NCBI RefSeq assembly: GCF_021869535.1
Contig: NW_026262593.1
Coordinates: forward strand, 14,694,001 to 14,758,000
From: Mytilus californianus
Lineage: Eukaryota
Direction of reading: 5' to 3'
DNA length: 64,000 nt
The translations under genes and the position numbers were made by a program. The notes under the pieces were generated by a model that had not been told where the DNA came from, searched no databases, and worked only from the letters and a program-made list of their open reading frames with translations. Every line of letters starts with the position of its first letter. Position 1 is the first letter of the stretch. Shown here piece after piece: positions 38,201-63,617 of this stretch.

Positions 38201-40370
38201 TACATAATAACTTAGTTAGGAGGAAGAATGACTGAAATCGACACTACATAAATATTTTGTTCGGTCACCATCACGAATGGCGGGTGAAGCACGCACAGCA
38301 GGATACACTCACCCTGTCGATGCACCCGGTACCGTTTCTTTTATAGTTCCTAAGTCTTTGTTTGTTACATTGATTTGTCTTCTCAAATCGATGCATGAGA
38401 TTTGAACATCAGTAAACTACTGGTCTCTTCTTATATATCATTACTTTATCATGGTTTCTTTGTATTTTAATGGTATATACAAGGGTCTGGATAGGGGGTC
38501 CTTCAATTCTTAACTCTTTAATTGTTTATAGCTCTATTGCTCTATTCTTCATAAATTTTGTCCATTATCATCTATTCTTTATATTTTAGCGCTCAATTAT
38601 TCCCTATTCCTTATATTATTGGCCTTTTTTCTCTATTCTTTATTTTTTAGCCATTTATTTTGCACTTTTCCCCATTATTCTCTATTCTGGAAACCCTATC
38701 TAGACCCTCATATACATCATGTCTTTTCCTATATATAAATACTTAATCATGGTTTCTTTGTATATTAAAGGTATATACATTATTTCTCTTCATTTTACAG
38801 CTAGCTCAAAGGTAATGTCGAGCTATCATGGTTTAGGAGAGGACACGCTCAATGTTGACACGTACTATATTCCATTTGATGCAGGACATTTGACCATGTC
38901 ATTGACTACGAAAGGATGCGCACCAGTATCCGAAGGTTTCCAAACAAACGATGGCATCTTCAATATTGGTTTCATGGGACTAACTAGTGGCATAACAGAC
39001 CAATCTGTGTTCGAATTGCCTTCCCCTTGTAAGGAGGAGTCGATGAAAAAGAGAGTATGTATTAACATCAGCATCCTTCAAAGGATCGAATTTTATTTAA
39101 TCAATCCCTCCTAAAGTTCAACATATGCCAGATCATTACACTGTCCCATTTCTCAATAATATATAACACAACATTTAAATTAAGTGGAAAATATAGATAT
39201 CGTTTAGAGAGCCATTTTGTACAGAATTATAAGAGACTGTAACATTGAAACATTATAGAAAATTTGTTTATTATAAAACAAATATATAAGTACATTATTT
39301 ACAGTATAAAACACTTCTACGTCTTTTTGAAATTAGATAACAAAATGTCATGCTTTGACACAGCTACCAATCATATTTACTAAACATTCTTGACATAGTA
39401 ATATTAACAACTGAAGTACTAACAATATATTCTGTAATGTTAAACAAATATTCTACGTTGCACGCAGAAAATGTTTTCCTTACATGATAATTTCATATTT
39501 ATTTTATACTTGTGTTTTCTACTCATTTTATCTGCCCATATGAAAACCTTTCTGTTTAACCGATTATAACTCATATTAAAACGGAACCAAAGTCGAATTA
39601 AACATTGTCATTGTTTTTTAAAATAAATATCCACCCAATACCCCCAGCAACTGCAGTATTTGGAGTATATTAACCGACACTGGAAAAAATCTGCTAGCTC
39701 TATAATTATGTATAGCATTAATAAAAGAAAGATTTTATAACCCCAATACCAGTACCATATTCAGCATGTGGGAACACCAAACTTTCAGATAGTTTTGAAA
39801 AGACTGTATGAGGAACATAATAATAACATGAAAAAACCCACAGATACAAATGTAATACGATAAACCTAACAAGTAAATATTTGGAGATAGCTGATTTCTG
39901 TTAGATTTATACAATATAATGGAACAAGAAGAACCAATTACACATGCGCAACATGGAAAGCAGGATATTTTTACCCTTCCGGAGCACCTTGTGTTGGTCA
40001 GGTCTTGTCTTGTAGTGTTTTGTGGTCTGTTTATCTTTTGGTCGTTGTTCGTGTTTGGCTTTGACGTTGTCAGTTCATTTTCGACTTGTTTGATTATCCG
40101 CCTTTCTTGTAATCTTGTGCTGTCCTTATGTAACATATAATGTGTTTCTTTAGACTTACGCACCCAAAGCGATTGGCAGCCATTGCAAATAAAAGCTGAA
40201 TGCTGATACTATAAGTTTTTCTTCTTTTTGAAAGTTATATCAAATGCATACTATTTAAAATCCAAAGGCATATGTATGTGTGTTGTATATACGTTGATAA
40301 TGATTCACCAGAACTGTCAGTTTATTTTCTTTTTCAGGAAATACGACAGTCGCCATTCGTTCCCATCTGA
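35290..40370 (+). CDS. EPDR: Ependymin-related protein, copy A (5 exons, 209 aa, secreted)
   Basis: Exons 35290-35427, 36775-36888, 37359-37449, 38801-39054 and 40338-40370, all AG/GT, 630 nt in total. Signal peptide, CCLPQQLEG, GCAPVSE, FELPSPC. AATAAA at 40408. Confidence 0.9.
37900..38400 (+). mobile_element. Decayed Penelope-like RT fragment in EPDR-A intron 3
   Basis: IYPSELEIKDT..SASYLDL..NFPFLSNI then ISQLIRY in another frame. A shorter 3' remnant lies at ~49340-49530 in copy B. Confidence 0.7.
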
Positions 40371-49600: not shown

Positions 49601-51169
49601 TAAGCGGGTCCTTCAATTCTGAATTCTTTACTTTTTAGCTATTTTCCTCTATTCTACACAAATTTTGTGCGTTATTCTCTATTCTATATATGTTAGCACC
49701 GAAGTATTTCCTATTCCTTATATTATTGGCATGTTTTCTCTATTCTTTATATTCTACCCATTTATTTTGCACTTTTCCCCTTTATTCTGTATCAGGAAAC
49801 CCCATCTAGACCCGCATATACATCATGTCTCTTTCTATATATAAATACTTAATCATGATTTCTTTGTACATTAATGGTAACATACATTATATCTCTTCAT
49901 TTTACAGCTAGCTCAAAGGTAATGTCGAGCTATCATGGTTTAGGAGATGACACGCTCAAAGTTGACACGTACTATATTCCATTTGATGCAGGACATTTTA
50001 CCATGTCATTGACTACGAAAGGATGCGCACCAGTATCAGAAAGTTTCCAAATAAACGATGGCGTCTTCAATATTGGTTTCATGGGACTTACAAGTGGCAT
50101 AACAGACCCCTCCGTGTTCGAGTTGCCTTCCCCTTGTAAGGAGGGGTCGATGAGAAAGAGAGTATGTATAACACCAGCATCCTTCTAAGCATCCAATCTT
50201 ATTTAATAAATCCCTCATAAAGTTCAACATATACCAGATCATTAAACTTCATGTTAACAATTCAATTCAACTCAATACTTCATCTAAGTCTCATTTCTCA
50301 ATAATATATAATACAACATTACATCAAGTGGAACATATGGGTATCGTTCAGAGAACCATTTTGTACAGAATTATAAGAGACTGTAGCTCTATAATTATGT
50401 ATGGCATTAATAAAAGAAAGATTTTATAACCCGATACCAGTACCATATTCAACCAGTGAGAACACCAAACTTTTCAGATAGTTTTGAAAAGACTGTATGA
50501 GGAACATAATAATAACATGAAAAAAAAAACCCACAGATACAAATATAATACGATAAATCTATCAAGTAAATATTTGGAGATAGCTGATTTCTGTTAGATT
50601 TATACAATATAATGGAACAAGTAGAACCAATTACACATGTGCAACATGGAAAGCAGGATATGTTTACCCTTCCGGAGCACCTTGTGTTGGTCAGGTCTTG
50701 TCTTGTTGTGTTTTGTGGTCTGTTTATCTTTTGATCGTTTTTCGTGTTTGGCTTTGACGTTGTCAGTTCATTTTCGACTTGTAAGTTTGATTATCCGCCT
50801 TTCTTTTACAAAGGCAATATAAAAAAAAAATGCATTAAAACCATGTTCTTACTAGTATTTGTCATTTACTCGCAGGTAGATGTTAAACAAAAGTACAAGT
50901 TTAAATGTAATCTTGTGCTGTCCTTATGTAACATATAATGTGTTTCTTTAGACTTACGCACCCAAAGCGATTGGCAGCCATTGCAAATAAAAGCTGAATG
51001 CTGATACTATAAGTTTTCTTCTTTTTGAAAGTTATATCAAATGCATACTATTTAAAAATCAAAGGCATACATATATGTGTGTTGTATATACGTTGATAAT
51101 GATTCACCAGAACTGTCAGTTTATTTTCTTTTTCAGGAAATACGACAGTCGCCATTCGTTCCCATCTGA
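43631..51169 (+). CDS. EPDR: Ependymin-related protein, copy B (5 exons, 209 aa)
   Basis: Exons 43631-43768, 47260-47373, 49110-49200, 49908-50161 and 51137-51169. Exon lengths are identical to copy A, the frame is intact, and there are ~23 aa differences. AATAAA at 51298. Confidence 0.9.
43951..45462 (-). mobile_element. Helentron-type non-autonomous element with ~490-500-bp tandem units
   Basis: End GACGACGAC...GCCAAGTGATGGCATAATCTCACATGGGGCCCTTCGGGCCTCGGTTAGCTAAA. Units start at ~43952, 44451 and 44942. Absent from the paralogous intron of copy A. Confidence 0.7.
46190..47105. mobile_element. Element with a long hairpin at each end, inserted in EPDR-B intron 1
   Basis: Hairpin ~46193-46290 centred on TGGCC-GGA-GGCCA and hairpin ~47047-47098 (TAGCCTTTG..GAGGTC/GACCTC..CAAAGGCTA). 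An internal tRNA-like GAGTTCGATTCCC motif lies at ~46520. Not in copy A. Confidence 0.5.
47810..48550. repeat. ~160-bp tandem array (about 4.5 copies)
   Basis: GGCCGATCGACT anchors at ~47838, 47999, 48160, 48319 and 48478. Confidence 0.85.
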
Positions 51170-56232: not shown

Positions 56233-58596
56233 ATGGAAGTTAACATGTGGAGTGTACTCCTAGGTTTGCTTGTTTTCACAACAACTCCAGCAGAGACATC
56301 AACATGTTGTTTACCGCAAATGGAAGGGACATTAGGCTTCTCAAGCGGATACCAAGTAAAAGACAAGGGTTTCCTAACAGAGGTACGTTCCTTAAACACA
56401 GGTAGTTAAGGCATAGCCCCCCTTTTTTTGGCATTTAAAATTCTTCTATAAAATAAAATTTCTTTAGCAACTTTGTATTTATACAATTATCAGTAAAGAT
56501 ATAACAGTTTCTTTAGAAAATCCCAGGCTCTCGCGCATAAAATTAAAACAATAAGGGCAATTAGAGACCAAATTTAATCTTGAACGCATTGGTATGAACA
56601 AAATGTAGATGATCGAAGATTATGGAACGCCACAGCTGTCTTATGTGGAACTCTGATATTACGTTATGTTAATTTGTTCTGTTATTACTTGATGATAGTT
56701 TGTCTTTACATAATATGATTTTGACATTACGCAATGATGTTTTTATCGATATTACATGATATGGATTCGTATTGACTTGATATAGTTTTGTCATTACTTA
56801 GTATGGTTTTGTCTGTAACCGGAGAGCATGATTCTACTTGCAAAATCGCATGTCTCCACCGGGACTCGAACCCGGGACCTCTGTGTTACAAGGCATCGCG
56901 TTAACCGACTGAGCTAAAGAAGTACTTCCTTAGCTCAGTCGGTATACGCGCTGCCTTGTAACACAGAGGTCCCGGGTTCGAGTCCCGGCGGAGACCTACG
57001 ATTTTGCAAGTAGAATCATGCTCTCCGGTTACATTGTCGCCCAACAATAAAAACCCATGGTAGTTAGAGAGGATTTCTAGCTAGGGTATGTGTGTGAGAG
57101 TCATAATGGTAACTATGATGACTCTTGAGGTGGGGGAAGTGTGACGGGATTGCTTCCCTTCATTACTCGATGTAGTTTCACCATTATTTAATGTGGTTGT
57201 GTCATTAGGCAATGTGGTTTTAACATTAAATGATGTGTATGTGACTTGACGTGATGTAGTTGTTTCATTACATGATGTGGTTTTGTTATTTCGTAATGAT
57301 GATTTGCCGATTATTTATATGGCTTTAACATTACGTAATGATGTTTCAAAATTTGACGATTTTACACTACATGATGTGTTTGTTTCAGTATTTGATGTGG
57401 TCATGTCATTCTTTGATGTGGTTATGTAACAAAAAATTTGTTCATGCAATAATCATAAATAGTTTCTGACATACGGTTCGACATGCGACCCCCCCCCCCC
57501 CCCCCCCAACCCCCTTTTTAAAAAAAAATCAATATCTCTACAATTTTGAATCAAAACCAAAAAGTATACAGATCTTTAGATTAATATAACTAAGAAGTGT
57601 ATAAAATTTTAAGCAATAATCATAAATCGTATTTGACTCCCCCTTTTTTTACAAAATACTCAATAACTCAAAAATAAAATTTTGAATCATCACCAAAAAG
57701 TATACAGATCTTAAGATTAATATAACTAAGAAGTGTGTAAAGTTTTAAGCAATAATCATAAATTGTTTTTGAGATACCGCACGACATGTGAAAAAAATAC
57801 ACACACCTGTTTTAGTTACTAAGTCCCATAACTCAAAAATTTTTAATCTTATTTTCACCAAAAAGTATACAGATCGTTTGACCATCATTAGAAAGTGTTA
57901 CAACTATGTTAAGTTTCATGAAATTTGGATAAGTCGTTCTCAAGTTACGGTGCGACATGTTTACATCGGACAGACAGACGGACAGACGACATTTGTATAC
58001 CATAATACGTCCCGTCAAAATTTTGACGGGCGTATAAAAACAAATATGACACACATGAAACAACGACAACCATTGAACTACAGGTTCCTAACTTGGGGCA
58101 GGCATTTAAAGAAAGTGCACGCGGCGGAGTTTAACATGTATGTAAGCGCTAATCCCTATCATAACCGAGTGTATCATAGCACAGCATAAGAAGAAAATGT
58201 AAAGACAGTTTTGATTGGCTCAACTAAATAGATCAGTATGACTTGATAACATAAATCTATCAGTTGGATCTCGGATGCTTTGGAAGGGTAAGCGGATTCT
58301 GCTTAACTTGTGGCACCCGTCGAGTTATTCGTGAAAGTACAAACCCAGTGATTTTTTTTTTGGTAGTTTACATTCGAGTAAAAGATGACGGGATTGTGGT
58401 TACGACAACTGGAACCTATTCGTCGTCACCTTTGAAACAGATATTTCAAAAAGTTTTTTTTTTCAATTAGTGCGTGGTAAATCAGAAACTGCAATTAATA
58501 AAAAAAAAGTTTAATATTCATATGTTCAAATGAACATACACGCTAAAAAAAGCTGGAGAGTTCTTATTTTATAGAATTGATGCTTTGTTGCTTAGC

Positions 58597-58643
<47 letters not shown>

Positions 58644-61600
58644 ACACACATTTCCCTTTAACTTTATGTTCCAAATGTGCATAACAAGAGGTTTAAAAAA
58701 AATCTGCAAAATATGAATGATTCGATAGTCCAGGCTGAACACCTGAATTTTTTTTATGTCCAGCTATTATGTAACAATTTAAAGAAATGACGTTTTAACG
58801 CTATTTTCTGAATAGGGTCCACGACATAGTCGCTTATTATTTCCATTACACTGCTCTTAGCATATATTTATTTATATTTCCAGAATGTGCATATGCTGCA
58901 CTTTGATGTTAAAAAATAAGAAATATGTTGAACGTTTATGTTTAAAGCTTTGTGATAAACTAAGTGTCCAGTGTTTTTGTTACGCGTTTGTTTTCTGGGG
59001 AAAAATGCCGACGTCGTAAATGATTGAAGTAATTTGAAGACGTTACGTTTGTGGACTCAGCTTTATGCACACATCAAGTAATGTTAAAACCACATTGCCT
59101 AATGACATAACCACATAAAAAATCGTGGAACCACATCGAGTAATGACAGAACCATATTAAGTAATGACAAAACTATATCAAGTTAATACGAAATCATCTC
59201 ATTAAGTAATGACTATTCCATATTGAGTTATATCAAAACATCATTACGTAATGTCAAAACTATATTATGTAAAGACAAACTATCATTAAGTAATAATAGA
59301 ACAACATAACGTAATATCAGAGTTCCACATAAGACAGCTGTGGCGTTCCATAGTAGATGGTTACTATTTCGCTGTTGTGTGACGATAAATACAAGGCAGC
59401 CCAAGTCTACATTTTAGATTAGCTATATGGGTCATTTTCAAAAAATGTCGAATTTTAAAATGATTTAAAGTTACTTATTCATACAACCCTCGCTATAAGC
59501 AAATCAAAACAAACAGTACTTATAGAACAACATATAAAAAGATGCAATCTTGATAATGTCATACAAGAATATATTGAAACATTTTTTGATAGGTGGTGCA
59601 ATATTTTGTCTCTCCTGTTACCATGTTCAAAAGAAAATTCGGGTTATTTAGAAAAGGTTCCGATAAAATTTTAAGCTGGTTTTTCGTAGCCAATTAGATG
59701 GTTTTCAAGAGTAAAAACTTCTCTATATATTCATTCTGTGAAATAATAGATTATTTGCAAAATCTCCATGTTGTACTGAAAAACGCCTCTAAACATTGGT
59801 TTTAAAAGGTTATAAAAATAACCACCAGTAATGCAAGTCTAAGATAGCAATTCATAATATTCAGCTTTTTTCCTCTCTTTCAAGTAAACCCAACATCAAG
59901 TATATCCCTCACATGTTGGTTCACTTTTATTTTATTGGTAACAGGAACGTACGTTAATGATATATCACTGTATTAAGTTCTCTCCTGTTACCTTTTTGTC
60001 TATCCTTTTACCGATAGCAGTATTGCGTCTGCAAATGCTAAATTGCGAAGATTAAGAGTTAACACGTTATAAACTTTAGATGAGTTCAAACATATGTTAT
60101 TATAAACTTTGTAAAGACGTTTCTGTCTACTGTTGTCTATCATGTTACTGTAACCATAGCAACCATAGTAACAGGATACAAATTTCTTCATTTTTGAATG
60201 CTGTTGTGAAATAACTACTCTTCCTTTTGACAAAGTGATAATGTTTTTCTGTTGTGATTTTGGTTTCGAACACGTTATTGCACTTTTTACAAGTATATTA
60301 TTGGTGTAATTAATCAATATGTTGGTAACAGCATAGACATGAAAAAATTAAAAGTACGCGTACCCATTTTTTTTCACTAAATGTCTTAAAATTTCTTTTC
60401 TCTACACTGATATACAAGAAACGTGCTGTGTTAAATGTTTAGGTTACTTTGCGCTTTAGAAATCAACACTGATTAGTTCAATATTCACTGATAGGGAGAA
60501 CAATTTAACGGTTGATTTAAATAGCGGTAACAGGATGGACATGAACTTCTTGTACGCTGATTGAATTTAGTTTGTAGAAAAAAATGTTACATATAATAAT
60601 AAAGAAGCTGCGATTTCTAGTTAGAGTTATTAACGTTCTAAAAAAGTCTTTTTTTGCAGATATCAAGTCGATCAGAAAAAATAAAAAAAACATTTGAAAT
60701 GTGTTACTATGACACTGTACGCAAATAAATTACGCAAAAATCGGACTTAAATATATATATTATAATCTAATCAAAATAGATCTAAATCGTGTTTATTATT
60801 AATGTTCTGACTCATAAATCCCACAAACTTTCATTTAAACACTTACAACTGCATTTTCCATTAGAAATAAAAAAAATTAGCATGGGTGTACCGAAAATTC
60901 GACATTTTTTTAAAATGACCCATATGATCTGCATCATGGATCATCATGGGAAGTCGTCAACATTTTATTTATATTTATCAATCGGCAATCCTGGGCGAAT
61001 CCGCTACTCTCGGCCGAGTTGTGACGAATGTCTATTAATAACTCTTGGGGTGTACAGGTTTACCTAAATTAACTCTTATAGAATTCTGATATACAGTTAC
61101 TAGATTATAAGGTATTTTTGTCAATAAAAATGAGATACGCAAAATTTAATCGACCAAATATTGAATTGGTTACTAGTACAGTACTGACACATATGTTTAA
61201 CTATTATACATAATTATCATAAATAAATGACTTAAAATACATCTTGGGGTAAACGTCTCTATTGTTTTACCCAAACTTGATTACTATGGTTTCTACTTAA
61301 GCTTTCTAATCCACTAACCTGCAATTAAAACGGAAAACAATTTATTGCTGTAGTTTTGAAAAGTTTGCACAAAGGATTAGATAAGACAACAGCATCAAGG
61401 ACTATACAAAGTTTGACAGAGATTGAGGAAAGCCGAACATGTGTGTTGTGGCGGATCCAGGAATTTTCATAAGTGGGGGCCCACTGTGACTGACTGCCTA
61501 TGAGGGGACCCGCTCCAGTCATGCTTGAGTGATTCCCTATATAATCAACTAAATTTTCCCCACAAAGCCCCCCCCCCCTAAATCCGTCTGTATATGTGTG

Positions 61601-63617
61601 ACCTACGGTTGCTAACTGTAACGTCATTTCGAATCTGGTGGAAAGTTGTCTCATTGGCAATCACACCACACCTTCATATTTTTATATGTGTCTAGTTTTA
61701 GTTTACTTGCTATGTTGTTTGACGTTCACTTAACGTGCGTCTGGTCATTATAATATTCACTTGCTAGTAATTTGCAGGCCATATTTCGACTTGCATATGA
61801 TGTGAAAGGAAAAAGACAGTCCACTCTAGGGGAGGGACAAACTAATGGAATACCATTTAAAACTCATCAAATTGACGATTATGCGGCGGTGAGTAACAAA
61901 TACTATAGTAAAAAATATATCGTAGCTTTGTAATAAAATTTGTCATTTTGATTCTTCTGTAGTGGTCGTTTTTATTCTTATGTTTCAAAGAACACATGTG
62001 CAGTTTGAACGGTTTTCTAGAAAACGTGTGGGCTAAGGAACTAGTATTAATTTAGTTAATCTAAAATTTTGCTGGTACAGACAAACATATTAAATGTTGA
62101 TTAAATGAGCTTTTAAAAAATTTAAAAACATGGACATAAGAATCCTTAGAGGTAGCCAAATACATGTAACACATTGAAAAAAAATCGCGAAGTTATTGTT
62201 ATGAGAACATTAAAATGTGGGTTTGGCTCTAGTGCATGGCCAATCATTGTCAATCCACACCATCTTTTTATTTTTATGCCCTGACCGTTAGTCTGTATTA
62301 GTTAATGTTATAACACAATAATAACAGTTATAATATGTATGAAACGGGTGCTTTATGGTCCTTTCACACAAAGTATAGATTTCGAATAACTAAGATCCAT
62401 GTTAAGTTACGTCTATTCGGTTATCTTATTAAAGTAAGAATATTTCATAAACTAATGCCAAGTAATTTGGCGTATTAAGCGACGTAAACAACATATCATG
62501 ATATGTTTTAGTTGGATTTATGAAAATTAGTAGAAATACGGGATGATTTCATGATGAATGATATATAATCGGAAAACATTAATGTTTTAAACCATATTAT
62601 TTTGAGATATATCTTAATTTATATTTTACAACAGGGCAAGAAGTACACAGTGACAAATGGAAAGTGCGTTATTGTACCTTTAAAAACTGAGATGCTATAC
62701 TGTATTCCATGTAAGTGTTTTGAATCTTTATATATGAAACACGCTTTCACCGTGGTACCATATCACTTGTGCAATCAATGACAAACCATCCAGGGTTTAA
62801 AATGTTTGAAGAGTAAGCTACTCCGAGTCTCCATATTTATGTCCTACTTAAATTCATTTAACTTGTTGCGGCTGCACCTTATCTTCAACAAATAAATTTG
62901 AGAATGGAAATGGGGAATGTGTCAAAAAGACAACAAACGGACCAAAGCGCAGAAAACAGACCACATTACCCATGATTCTTGACAGTTGTTACATGTGTAC
63001 CCTTTGAAAATCCTTGAATGCTATGGCTTTGATATATTTCTACATCCCTATTTCAGATCTGAAACAGTAGATCTATAACTAGAATCTCAAAGGACTAAAT
63101 CTAGCCTCAGTGGAACATAGCAGAATCTAAAGCACCCACAAAAAAAATAATACATGTAGTCGCTATATTCCATACTTTATTTTGATTATTCGAAGTAGTT
63201 AGCTCCTATAGTTTGGTACACATAGATTGAAAGATGTTTATATTGCATTTGTCATAGTAAGACCTACAGGCCTACTACATAAATACATTACTACAAAGTA
63301 CACCATTTTTGTATGTGCTATTATACTTAAATCATTTTTCCACAGCTGATGCGAAACTGGTGATGTCAACCTTTATTGGATTTGATGACAAGAAAATTGA
63401 TGTGGACATGTACTCATTCTCATTTCAAGGAGCCACTGTTACTATGTCCGTCACAAAAGACACCTGTGTACCGGTATCGGAACACGTCACATATCCAAAT
63501 GTGTTGGTTGATGTTGGTTACATGGGAATGACCAGTGGTATTCAAAACACTACTGTCTTTGATATTCCAAAGCCTTGTCAAAAGGTTGGACTTATGGGAG
63601 TTCCTCATGAACAAAAT
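56233..63617 (+). CDS. EPDR: Ependymin-related protein, diverged copy C (exons 1-4; last exon not identified in the window)
   Basis: Exons 56233-56382 (MEVNMWSVLLGLLVFTTTPAETSTCCLPQMEG...), 61778-61888 (AIFRLAYDVKGKR...), 62635-62710 and 63346-63617 (TCVPVSE...FDIPKPC). Intron phases match copies A and B. Confidence 0.88.
56814..57033. mobile_element. 220-bp palindrome (TG...CA) of two divergent tRNA-derived cassettes; LTR-like, followed by PBS-like TGTCGCCCAAC
   Basis: 110-bp arms with 7 mismatches and no spacer (centre GAAGT|ACTTC). Each arm has A box TAGCTCAGTCGG, loop CTTGTAA, B box GGTTCGAGTCC and a T4 run. The acceptor stem is broken, so these are not functional tRNAs. Confidence 0.75.
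57440..58040 (-). mobile_element. Helentron/DINE-1-type non-autonomous element
   Basis: End CCCGTC-AAAATTTT-GACGGG hairpin + CGTATAAAAA, a (GACA)n-like tract and ~128-bp internal repeats. Confidence 0.7.

What the first reader, a model, noticed from the sequence alone, without database searches (positions are those of the whole stretch)
56814..57161. LTR-like unit that is a full palindrome of two outward-facing tRNA-derived Pol III cassettes, followed by a tRNA-Lys primer-binding site
Seen: a 220-bp spacer-less palindrome starting TGTAACC and ending GGTTACA. Each half has an A box, a Thr(TGT)-like anticodon loop, a perfect T arm/B box and a T4 terminator. One base after CA comes TGTCGCCCAAC, a 10/11 match to the tRNA-Lys(CTT) PBS TGGCGCCCAAC. 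The opposite TIR of the host element (~59140) shows the empty site GTC|ATTACTCG, so the insert is 56814-57161 (palindrome + PBS + ~115 bp). The flanking TTGTC match is therefore not a true TSD. Established: plant Cassandra TRIMs carry 5S rRNA Pol III promoters in their LTRs. Inference: an animal analogue using tRNA promoters in a bidirectional, self-complementary LTR, which could drive Pol III transcription both ways, form cruciforms or dsRNA, and sit 430 bp into an EPDR intron.
Basis: partly seen in the sequence, partly recalled or inferred. Interest (0 to 1): 0.8.

Follow-up and report, generated by a model that had tools for sequence, protein, structure and literature searches.

The report
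Rearranged copy of known Helenus retrotransposon
The 220-bp palindrome is real, but it is a one-off copying error at the front end of a damaged copy of Helenus, a small mussel retrotransposon with tRNA-like repeats that was described in 2024, and not a new kind of repeat.

Summary
Window 56814-57033 is a spacer-less palindrome with 110-nt arms that are 94% complementary. Each arm carries an A box, a perfect B box and a T4 run. A 10/11 match to the tRNA-Lys primer-binding site follows.

The insert is a copy of Helenus-1 (Kojima 2024, PMC10886601), a published tRNA-LTR TRIM of mussels. This genome holds more than 600 candidate copies. Normal copies are 456 bp: two 177-bp TG...CA LTRs, a Lys PBS, a PPT and a 4-bp TSD. 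Their LTRs are not palindromes.

In the window copy, the first 67 bp of the 5' LTR are replaced by an inverted copy of its last 110 bp. The 3' LTR is cut to about 23 bp.

About ten other loci carry similar aberrant ends. Seven that I read each have their own 4-bp TSD (five exact, two 3/4). They are scattered among ordinary subfamilies (one clade rejected, p = 8e-6). In two of them the arms come from different subfamilies.

The best explanation is a reverse-transcription strand-transfer error, seeded by a natural, conserved hairpin at the same centre. The resulting cDNA has two U5 ends and is then integrated. The palindrome is not inherited.

The family is known. The palindromic form and the hairpin are not mentioned in the Helenus paper, nor in the few other papers my searches found. 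Interest is modest.

The parts
56814..56923 (-). Left arm. An inverted copy of the last 110 bp (presumed R-U5, LTR positions 68-177) of a Helenus-1 LTR. It stands where the first 67 bp (U3) of the 5' LTR should be.
   Evidence: Its reverse complement is 96-98% identical to the R-U5 part of ordinary copies (minus-strand matches to query 1-124). It starts with TGTAACC, the inverted U5 end.
56924..57033 (+). Right arm. The normal R-U5 part of the 5' LTR, with the tRNA-derived unit: A box 56931-56942, B box 56975-56985, T4 57002-57005. It ends CCGGTTACA.
   Evidence: With the internal region it is 98% identical to ordinary copies.
57034..57139 (+). Internal region: a T, then the PBS TGTCGCCCAAC (57035-57045; family consensus TGGCGCCCAAC), a short body, and the polypurine tract GAGGTGGGGGAAG (57127-57139).
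57140..57165 (+). Stub of the 3' LTR (TGTGACGGGATTGCTTCCCT plus TCATTA). The last 6 bases, 57160-57165, are equally host sequence, so the junction is ambiguous within TCATTA.
   Evidence: Searches give the LTR start consensus. One search gives the empty-site joint and the loose ends ATTACTCGATG and TATGGTTTTG.
56810..56813 (+). Host bases TGTC next to the left end. This is the presumed left copy of a 4-bp TSD whose right copy was lost together with the 3' LTR.
   Evidence: Inference from the family's 4-bp TSD rule and the empty-site sequence.
56621..59352 (.). Host element: a 2.7-kb foldback-like repeat. Its inverted ends are built from 21-bp subrepeats. The Helenus copy sits in its left end.
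   Evidence: I2, I4-I6, I23; D1-D3. One search shows very high contig depth.

Best explanation
Window 56814-57165 is one damaged copy of Helenus-1, a published non-autonomous LTR retrotransposon (TRIM) of mussels whose LTRs contain a tRNA-derived Pol III-type promoter unit.

A normal copy reads: LTR (177 bp, TG...CA), then T plus a PBS for tRNA-Lys(CTT), about 75 bp of body, a PPT, and a second LTR, flanked by a 4-bp TSD.

Every normal LTR has a natural inverted repeat of about 2 x 18-22 nt. A stretch at the end of U3 (x') is complementary to the first roughly 20 nt of the tRNA-like unit (x). Its centre is exactly the centre of the window's palindrome.

Proposed mechanism. During reverse transcription, the 3' end of a minus-strand strong-stop DNA is the complement of R-U5 and begins at the U5 end. 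Instead of making the normal first jump, it anneals at this inverted repeat on another minus strand, or on itself. It is then extended back through R-U5 and the tRNA primer. The product reads inverted R-U5, direct R-U5, then PBS. It acts as a plus-strand strong-stop DNA. The finished cDNA therefore has a palindromic 5' end and a normal 3' LTR. Both tips are U5 ends (TGTAACC...GGTTACA), and integrase inserts it with a 4-bp TSD.

A transcript starting in R would rebuild a normal LTR, so the palindrome is a dead end that arises anew each time.

In the window copy the 3' LTR and the right TSD were probably lost later. A 159-bp deletion between two TCATTA repeats would do it: one at LTR positions 21-26, the other formed by TSD TC plus host ATTA.

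Shown: family membership, the anatomy, recurrence with TSDs, non-monophyly, heterologous arms, the natural hairpin.

Inferred: the order of strand transfers, the role of integrase, the later deletion.
For: Family and anatomy. More than 150 matches among 600-700 candidates in the genome. 29 full elements of 453-471 bp have LTR-LTR identity of 0.88-1.00, and 23 of 29 have a perfect TSD. The published Helenus-1 consensus has the same LTR ends, PBS, PPT and sizes.

PBS. 39 tRNA-Lys(CTT) genes end in CCCCACGTTGGGCG. The family PBS complements 11 nt of that end plus CCA.

Recurrence with their own TSDs. L002 AGAG/AGCG, L014 ATTG/ATTG, L017 TATG/TTTG and L033 CTTC/CTTC are each a palindrome plus internal region plus a full 3' LTR. 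L035 AAGA/AAGA is a solo palindrome. L034 AATG/AATG and L031 AGTG/AGTG are other forms with two U5 ends. The census found about 10 independent loci.

Not one lineage. On a tree of R-U5 plus internal region, the 6 palindromic copies need 5 changes. The AU test rejects a single clade at p = 7.6e-6. The window copy is 98% identical to ordinary copies.

Arms copied from different templates. In L017, the right arm against the 3' LTR is 0.94 identical, but the left arm against either is 0.64. In L033, the left arm against the 3' LTR is 0.90, and the right arm is 0.82-0.83 against either. The window arms differ at TTAAC/TATAC and ATG/ATA, both of which are polymorphisms within the family.

Footprint of reverse transcription. 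L031 holds GCCCCACGTTGGGCGCCA fused to A plus the inverted U5 end. That 18-mer is the last 18 nt of mature tRNA-Lys, including the non-encoded CCA. No other locus fetched has it.

Natural hairpin at the same centre. 81% of cells pair, against 24-59% when the partner is slid, across 46 LTRs of two Helenus families. Plus-sense RNA folds at -30.4 (z -5.0) and -32.4 (z -6.7) kcal/mol.

Precedent. Hairpin-driven self-priming of HIV-1 minus-strand strong-stop DNA is established in vitro (PMC6088434).
Against: No intermediate was observed; the pathway is inferred from end products.

The window copy itself has no TSD and no full 3' LTR. Its integration by integrase rests on analogy with the other copies and on the TCATTA coincidence.

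L033 has its left arm like the 3' LTR but a different right arm. That needs three templates in one particle, or later gene conversion.

The prediction that Helenus-2, which has the same hairpin, also makes palindromes found no case. Power was low: about 87 LTR starts at an expected rate of about 1.5%.

No read or contig listed spans the window's palindrome, so this locus has no read-level confirmation. The 7 arm differences and the other palindromic loci argue against an assembly artefact.

Identity to the published consensus was judged by reading, not computed.
Confidence: 0.72

Rival explanations
1. Intramolecular self-priming. The minus-strand strong-stop DNA folds back on its own terminal hairpin and copies itself, as HIV-1 cTAR does. 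Both arms would then come from one template.
For: The natural hairpin exists. The HIV-1 precedent is established. In L002 the two arms and the 3' LTR are equally alike, 0.975 each, which fits a single source.
Against: The arms of L017 and L033 belong to different subfamilies. The window's arms differ at known family polymorphisms. The hairpin is weaker in the minus sense, -23.3 and -11.1 kcal/mol, because its G.U pairs become C.A mismatches. Self-priming needs the RNA to start upstream of x', and that is unknown.
Confidence: 0.15
2. A DNA-level rearrangement after a normal insertion. Replication template switching or hairpin-induced inverted duplication at the natural inverted repeat turned a normal 5' LTR into a palindrome.
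For: Short inverted repeats are known seeds of palindrome formation (general knowledge). Older palindromes here show central deletions, as unstable DNA palindromes do: L002, L014 and L035.
Against: In the seven aberrant copies I read (all except the window's), the inverted arm ends exactly at the U5 tip and abuts the TSD, with U3 exactly replaced. A DNA-level switch would not stop at the element's last base or keep the TSD. It also cannot bring in an arm from another subfamily or a tRNA 3' end with CCA.
Confidence: 0.08
3. The palindrome is the working LTR of a new TRIM lineage, with two outward-facing Pol III promoters.
For: Each arm has intact A and B boxes and a T4 run. Several palindromic copies exist.
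Against: Ordinary LTRs are not palindromic. No copy has two palindromic ends. Palindromic copies do not form a clade. The family is already described without this structure. There is no RNA evidence.
Confidence: 0.03
4. An assembly artefact, such as a fold-back chimera in long reads.
For: No contig listed spans the palindrome in the short-read data.
Against: The arms differ at 7 positions that match family polymorphisms. An artefactual fold-back would be exact. Eight or more other loci show the same architecture with TSDs and diverged arms.
Confidence: 0.02

Closest known systems
Helenus-1_MyCo and Helenus-1_MyGa (Helenus / TRIMp3; Kojima 2024, PMC10886601)
   Same: Same LTR ends (TGTGACGGGATTGC...CTCTCCGGTTACA). 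Same tRNA-like core with GGTTCGAGTCC. Same PBS (TTGGCGCCCAAC) and PPT (GAGGTGGGGGAAG). 102-bp internal region, about 180-bp LTR, 4-bp TSD, host family Mytilidae.
   Different: The window copy has a palindromic 5' end in place of U3-R-U5, and a truncated 3' LTR. The paper does not mention palindromes, hairpins or inverted repeats.
Cassandra (plant TRIM with 5S rRNA-derived LTR promoter)
   Same: [quoted passage not shown]
   Different: Cassandra carries 5S (type 1 promoter), lives in plants and makes a 5-bp TSD. This element is tRNA-derived (A and B boxes), lives in an animal and makes a 4-bp TSD.
biv-TRIM (Satovic et al. 2019, PMC6934838)
   Same: A TRIM of bivalves that also forms solo repeats and tandem arrays.
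   Different: biv-TRIM has 202-218-bp repeats, a 77-80-bp internal domain, PPT GGGGAGA, no canonical PBS and a conserved TGATCCCAAAGGAC. None of these is present here.
TAR-dependent self-priming of HIV-1 minus-strand strong-stop DNA (Guo et al. 1997, reviewed in PMC6088434)
   Same: A hairpin at the R end lets the strong-stop DNA prime on complementary DNA instead of making the first jump.
   Different: In HIV-1 it is an in-vitro dead end suppressed by nucleocapsid. Here the products seem to have been completed, integrated and fixed in a germ line, and at least some were primed between molecules.
Foldback elements and MITE-like palindromes
   Same: A spacer-less inverted repeat. One derivative (L035) is a stand-alone palindrome with a TSD.
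   Different: The arms are the R-U5 part of an LTR, followed by a PBS and PPT. They derive from a retroelement, not a DNA transposon.

Membership tests
Helenus (TRIM with tRNA-derived LTR; TRIMp3) | Two direct LTRs ending TG...CA around a short non-coding internal region | tested here: met
   Met for the family: 29 elements of 453-471 bp with 177-bp LTRs. The window copy itself departs from it, with a palindromic 5' LTR and a 3' LTR cut to about 23 bp.
Helenus (TRIM with tRNA-derived LTR; TRIMp3) | A tRNA-derived sequence with conserved A and B boxes inside the LTR | tested here: met
   TAGCTCAGTCGG and GGTTCGAGTCC are present in each arm. Rfam tRNA scores 17 bits, below threshold, as expected for the non-functional tRNA-like units described.
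Helenus (TRIM with tRNA-derived LTR; TRIMp3) | A PBS complementary to a tRNA 3' end just after the 5' LTR, and a PPT before the 3' LTR | tested here: met
   The family PBS TGGCGCCCAAC is an 11-nt complement of this genome's tRNA-Lys(CTT) 3' end plus CCA. The window has 10/11. PPT GAGGTGGGGGAAG lies at 57127-57139.
Helenus (TRIM with tRNA-derived LTR; TRIMp3) | 4-bp target site duplication (animal Helenus) | tested here: met
   23 of 29 are perfect, and 25 of 29 match at 3 of 4 or better. The window copy has none; only a 2-bp overlap, TC.
Helenus (TRIM with tRNA-derived LTR; TRIMp3) | Sequence similarity to the published Helenus-1 consensus of Mytilus | tested here: met
   Judged by reading the supplementary consensus sequences against the copies.
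Cassandra | A 5S rRNA-derived sequence in the LTR | tested here: not met
   There is no 5S match in the Rfam scan of 56600-57400. The unit is tRNA-type.
biv-TRIM | 202-218-bp repeats, 77-80-bp internal domain, PPT GGGGAGA, conserved TGATCCCAAAGGAC, no canonical PBS | tested here: not met
   Here the LTR is 177 bp, the internal region 102 bp, the PPT differs and there is a clear Lys PBS.
Functional tRNA gene | A cloverleaf with paired acceptor and anticodon stems, detectable by tRNA finders | tested here: not met
   ARAGORN finds none. Rfam scores below the gathering score. The acceptor strands ACTTCCT and CGGAGAC do not pair (read from the sequence).

The most novel reading that the evidence does not exclude
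The rare palindromic 5' ends are germ-line fossils of a reverse-transcription side reaction. They would show three things not described for Helenus or other TRIMs.
(a) A conserved plus-sense RNA hairpin pairs the end of U3 with the first roughly 20 nt of the tRNA-like unit. It is present in Helenus-1 and Helenus-2 here. By eye it is also present in many published bivalve and coelacanth consensus sequences.
(b) This hairpin misdirects strong-stop DNA onto other minus strands, which implies that several TRIM RNAs are reverse-transcribed together in one particle.
(c) The partner integrase accepts cDNAs with two U5 ends.
The hairpin might have a function of its own, for example masking the tRNA-like fold from RNase P/Z or tuning strand transfer.
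Probability: 0.45. Interest if true: 0.5.

Novelty: new variant of a known kind. Interest (0 to 1): 0.33.

Why it matters
The headline idea, an animal Cassandra-like TRIM driven by a tRNA promoter, is real but was published in 2024 as Helenus. The finding therefore adds no new class of element.

What it does add is modest and specific. It gives a set of natural by-products that record how these miniature retroelements are reverse-transcribed, including a copy that kept the 18-nt end of its tRNA-Lys primer with CCA. It also gives a conserved hairpin at the U3/R border that the describing paper does not mention.

Both offer handles for testing where Helenus RNA starts, whether Pol III really makes the template, and how many RNAs share a particle.

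For annotation, it warns that 220-bp tRNA-like palindromes in mussel genomes are rearranged Helenus ends. They are not miRNA precursors, although Rfam miRNA models hit this one below threshold. Nor are they foldback transposons.

Tried and rejected
1. tRNA gene: ARAGORN found none and Rfam scored below threshold.

2. miRNA precursor: MIR807 and mir-769 hits are below their gathering scores. They only reflect the long hairpin.

3. Tandem or satellite unit: this was my first reading of the 279-bp spacing. I dropped it once the LTR-internal-LTR structure with TSDs was clear.

4. biv-TRIM membership: rejected on every defining feature.

5. One replicating palindromic lineage: rejected by the tree and the AU test.

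6. Transcription evidence: one raw RNA run gave 66 reads on 1 kb, mostly from the host repeat. It showed no start or end clusters, so nothing can be said on Pol III use or on the RNA 5' end.

7. Read-level proof of the palindrome at this locus: no spanning contig was listed.

8. Helenus-3_MyGa copies: the LTR-start pattern found none in this genome.

Power was low, so this is neither support nor refutation.

10. Pfam on the putative first EPDR exon and on an ORF of the host element: no hits.

11. Literature on palindromic LTRs formed from strong-stop DNA in retrotransposons: nothing relevant in the held library.

The new palindromic loci C110:48195063 and C57:30880078 were therefore seen only as the 80-nt match strings.
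Full report
**1. The observation**

The stretch 56814-57033 is a spacer-less palindrome. Its arms, 56814-56923 and 56924-57033, are 110 nt each and 103/110 complementary. As single-stranded DNA it folds at -124.6 kcal/mol, against -27.9 for shuffles.

Reading outward from the centre, each arm has TAGCTCAGTCGG (A box), a perfect GGTTCGAGTCC (B box) and a T4 run. Each arm ends CCGGTTACA. One base later comes TGTCGCCCAAC.

The tRNA-likeness is weak. Rfam tRNA scores 17 bits per arm and ARAGORN calls nothing. The unit is tRNA-derived, not a gene.

Contigs from two DNA studies, one RNA-library contig and two raw RNA reads carry the empty form, joining 56811 to 57160. It skips 348 bases with 2 ambiguous letters. 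These presumably come from other copies of the very abundant host repeat.

**2. What the family is**

A search of the window's own genome (1.65 Gb) gave more than 150 scored matches out of about 660 candidates. Most cover only query positions 89-348 and are followed 23 bp later by a second partial copy. Aligning 21 copies with their flanks resolved this.

The standard element is 456 bp:
- a 177-bp LTR (TGTGACGGG...CCGGTTACA);
- a 102-bp internal region that starts T plus TGGCGCCCAAC and ends GAGGTGGGGGAAG;
- a second LTR.

Among 29 distinct elements, LTR-LTR identity runs from 0.88 to 1.00, and two have identical LTRs. The 4-bp TSD is perfect in 23. The exceptions are mostly tandem arrays.

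The genome has 39 tandem tRNA-Lys(CTT) genes ending ...GAGCCCCACGTTGGGCG. The family PBS is the exact complement of the last 8 encoded bases plus CCA.

**3. It is already known**

Kojima (2024, PMC10886601) described Helenus: TRIMs with a tRNA-like sequence in the LTR, a PBS and a PPT, and a 4-bp TSD in animals. They were found in Mytilidae among other groups. Bivalve families use tRNA-Lys and other primers, and some are predicted as tRNA-Thr.

The supplementary consensus of Helenus-1_MyCo has a 182-bp LTR and a 102-bp internal region. With Helenus-1_MyGa it shares the LTR ends, tRNA-like core, PBS and PPT with the copies here.

biv-TRIM (PMC6934838) is a different element.

The Helenus paper contains no occurrence of 'palindrom', 'hairpin' or 'inverted'.

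**4. What is odd about the window copy**

Measured against the standard element, the window reads as follows:
- an inverted copy of LTR positions 68-177;
- LTR positions 68-177 in direct orientation;
- the PBS, with one G>T change, which creates the false TTGTC 'TSD';
- the internal region and the PPT;
- only the first 20-26 bp of the 3' LTR.

The U3 part of the 5' LTR (67 bp) is thus replaced by an inverted R-U5. I call LTR positions 68-177 'R-U5' by analogy only. The RNA ends were not mapped.

**5. Other copies of the same kind**

Pattern searches and inspection found about ten independent loci.

Four have a palindromic 5' end, an internal region and a full normal 3' LTR, each with its own 4-bp TSD:
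- L002, AGAG/AGCG;
- L014, ATTG/ATTG; its 3' LTR is split by an unrelated 1.3-kb insert;
- L017, TATG/TTTG;
- L033, CTTC/CTTC.

L035 is a solo palindrome with AAGA/AAGA. Two near-identical copies lie on C2. It could come from recombination between the right arm and the 3' LTR, or from direct integration of a palindromic duplex.

L034 (AATG/AATG) and L031 (AGTG/AGTG) are other rearrangements whose two tips are both U5 ends. L029 has a truncated left arm.

Three older palindromes (L002, L014, L035) have lost their centres, as long DNA palindromes tend to do.

**6. Inherited or recurrent?**

On a maximum-likelihood tree of the R-U5 plus internal region (37 rows), the six palindromic copies sit among ordinary copies of different subfamilies. 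The label needs 5 changes. The AU test rejects a single clade at p = 7.6e-6.

Searching the genome with L014, L017 and L033 gave ordinary copies as their nearest relatives, at 89-91%. The window copy is 98% identical to ordinary copies. The palindromic end therefore arises again and again and is not passed on.

This is expected. A transcript that starts in R would regenerate a normal LTR from the 3' U3.

**7. Where the arms come from**

- L002: the two arms and the 3' LTR are equally alike, 0.975 each.
- L017: the right arm matches the 3' LTR (0.94), but the left arm carries the U5 motif of another subfamily (0.64).
- L033: the left arm resembles the 3' LTR (0.90) and the right arm differs (0.82-0.83).
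- The window: the arms differ at TTAAC/TATAC and ATG/ATA. Both are variants that segregate among ordinary copies.

At least some palindromes were therefore assembled from two templates. That excludes a simple copy-back of one strand and any purely local DNA duplication.

**8. The seed**

Ordinary LTRs already contain an inverted repeat centred at the same point. About 18-22 nt at the end of U3 are complementary to the first roughly 20 nt of the tRNA-like unit.

I aligned 46 LTRs of Helenus-1 and Helenus-2. The Helenus-2 LTRs were picked by their LTR start, not by the hairpin. In this alignment 81% of cells pair, against 24-59% when the partner is slid. Full compensatory change is limited (pair 14-47, G-C to A-U, in 9 sequences). 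Many pairs are G.U.

Accordingly, plus-sense RNA folds at -30.4 (z -5.0) and -32.4 kcal/mol (z -6.7). The minus sense gives only -23.3 and -11.1 (z -1.5). The hairpin thus looks selected in plus-sense RNA. U3 is in any case transcribed at the 3' end of the genomic RNA.

By eye, the same motif (...GAGCTAxGGGAA / TTCCCTTTAGCTC...) is present in many published bivalve consensus sequences and in coelacanth LTR1_LCh. It is absent from the short-LTR families. Its function is unknown. Masking the tRNA-like fold from tRNA-processing enzymes is a guess.

**9. Mechanism (inferred)**

A minus-strand strong-stop DNA starts at the U5 tip and ends with the complement of x. Because x' is the complement of x, that 3' end can pair with the complement of x' on another minus strand. 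If the RNA includes x', it can also pair with itself.

Extension then copies R-U5 and the 18 nt of the tRNA primer. The resulting strand reads inverted R-U5, R-U5, then PBS, which is exactly window 56814-57045. Its PBS end can make the normal second jump. The completed duplex has a palindromic 5' end, a normal 3' LTR and two U5 tips, and integrase inserts it with a 4-bp TSD.

Hairpin-driven self-priming of strong-stop DNA is established for HIV-1 in vitro (PMC6088434).

A direct trace of reverse transcription is L031. It contains GCCCCACGTTGGGCGCCA, which is tRNA-Lys positions 59-76 with CCA, joined through one A to the inverted U5 tip. From general knowledge, plus-strand synthesis copies the last 18 nt of the tRNA before stopping. 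The element's own PBS covers only 11 of these. An alternative reading of this string is a PBS/PBS head-to-head junction with one substitution. That cannot be excluded.

**10. The truncated right end of the window copy**

The 3' LTR stops within TCATTA (LTR positions 21-26), which is also the host sequence at the junction.

Suppose the element was inserted with a TGTC TSD. Then TC from the TSD plus ATTA from the host would form a second TCATTA, and a 159-bp deletion between the two repeats gives exactly the observed junction.

The alternative is capture of an incomplete cDNA by end joining. That needs the 4 extra matching bases by chance (about 1/256) or by microhomology, plus an unexplained duplicated TC. 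I favour the deletion, roughly 2:1.

**11. Transcription**

There is no evidence that either is transcribed. RNA reads over the insert are 1-4 deep with no start or end clusters.

The T4 lies about 80 nt downstream of the tRNA-like start in every LTR. Full-length Pol III template RNA would therefore need read-through. This is inference, and Kojima leaves promoter function untested.

**12. Context**

The insert lies in the left inverted repeat of a 2.7-kb foldback-like repeat (56621-59352). That repeat lies downstream of an exon encoding a signal peptide and a CC motif (56233 to about 56385). It lies upstream of an Ependymin-domain exon at 63345-63578 on the same strand. The 'EPDR intron' placement is plausible but not proven exon by exon.

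**13. Verdict**

The family is already known.

The palindrome is a recurrent, non-heritable by-product of reverse transcription, not a new LTR design. The palindromic form, the two-U5-end integrations and the conserved U3/R hairpin are, as far as the Helenus paper and my few other searches show, undescribed.

Earlier notes of this scan on the same window concern other coordinates and did not bear on this reading.

Noticed in passing
window 56621-59352: Host of the insert. A 2.7-kb foldback-like element whose inverted ends (50 nt perfect at the tips) are built from 21-bp subrepeats. Inside it has 136-bp direct repeats (57539-57772) and long C/G runs. Contig depth in public runs is 10^4-10^5, so it is a very abundant repeat.
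   Followed up: partly
L031 (= L027) 1482-1499; G000:C1:46341288-46341506: A complex Helenus rearrangement with TSD AGTG/AGTG. It contains GCCCCACGTTGGGCGCCA, the last 18 nt of mature tRNA-Lys(CTT) including the non-encoded CCA, fused through one A to an inverted U5 end. This is a fossil of the primer-cDNA junction, or else a PBS/PBS head-to-head junction with one substitution.
   Followed up: partly
G000:C110:103753502-103811073 (L066-L069): A tandem array of at least 39 identical tRNA-Lys(CTT) genes with a period of about 1135 bp, all on one strand.
   Followed up: no
L014 1866-3160: The 3' LTR of this old palindromic Helenus copy is split by an insert of about 1.3 kb with terminal inverted repeats (CAGGTCAGGAATAACCATTAATTGGTGG...). 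It is probably a DNA transposon or MITE.
   Followed up: no
L007/L009 (C143:70426461-70427027); L053 (C165:52859217-52859914); L029: Tandem Helenus arrays (LTR-internal-LTR-internal-LTR). The L053 array is flanked by one TSD, CTAC. Similar arrays are reported for Cassandra and biv-TRIM.
   Followed up: partly
L020, L021, L022 (C140:827573, C140:257505, C90:3432108): Three near-identical Helenus copies with the same TSD (GTAT). They sit inside a tandem repeat of about 35 bp (...CTAAACACTGTATGTTGTCCACTAACAGAATGAATG...). So one insertion was amplified together with a satellite or a segmental duplication.
   Followed up: no
G000:C35:29112389-29112593, C2:75686889-75687089, C2:75824355-75824555: The same solo palindrome (L035 type, with the mutated tip AGTAATCAGAGAGC) occurs three times. 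It was probably copied as part of a larger duplicated segment. Flanks were not compared for the C2 copies.
   Followed up: no
window 38836-39030, 49940-50137, 63345-63578 (+): Three Ependymin-domain (PF00811) exons on the same strand within 25 kb. This is a tandem cluster of EPDR-like genes; another cluster lies on C110.
   Followed up: no
L070-L083: A second Helenus family, matching the published Helenus-2_MyGa LTR start exactly, is present with at least 87 LTR starts. It has a longer (22-bp), G.U-rich version of the U3/R hairpin. Helenus-3_MyGa was not found by its LTR start.
   Followed up: partly
window 56844-57003: The Rfam miRNA models MIR807 (70.9 bits, gathering score 113) and mir-769 (45 bits, gathering score 57) hit the palindrome below threshold. 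Automated pipelines with lax cut-offs could mis-annotate such Helenus palindromes as miRNA precursors.
   Followed up: yes
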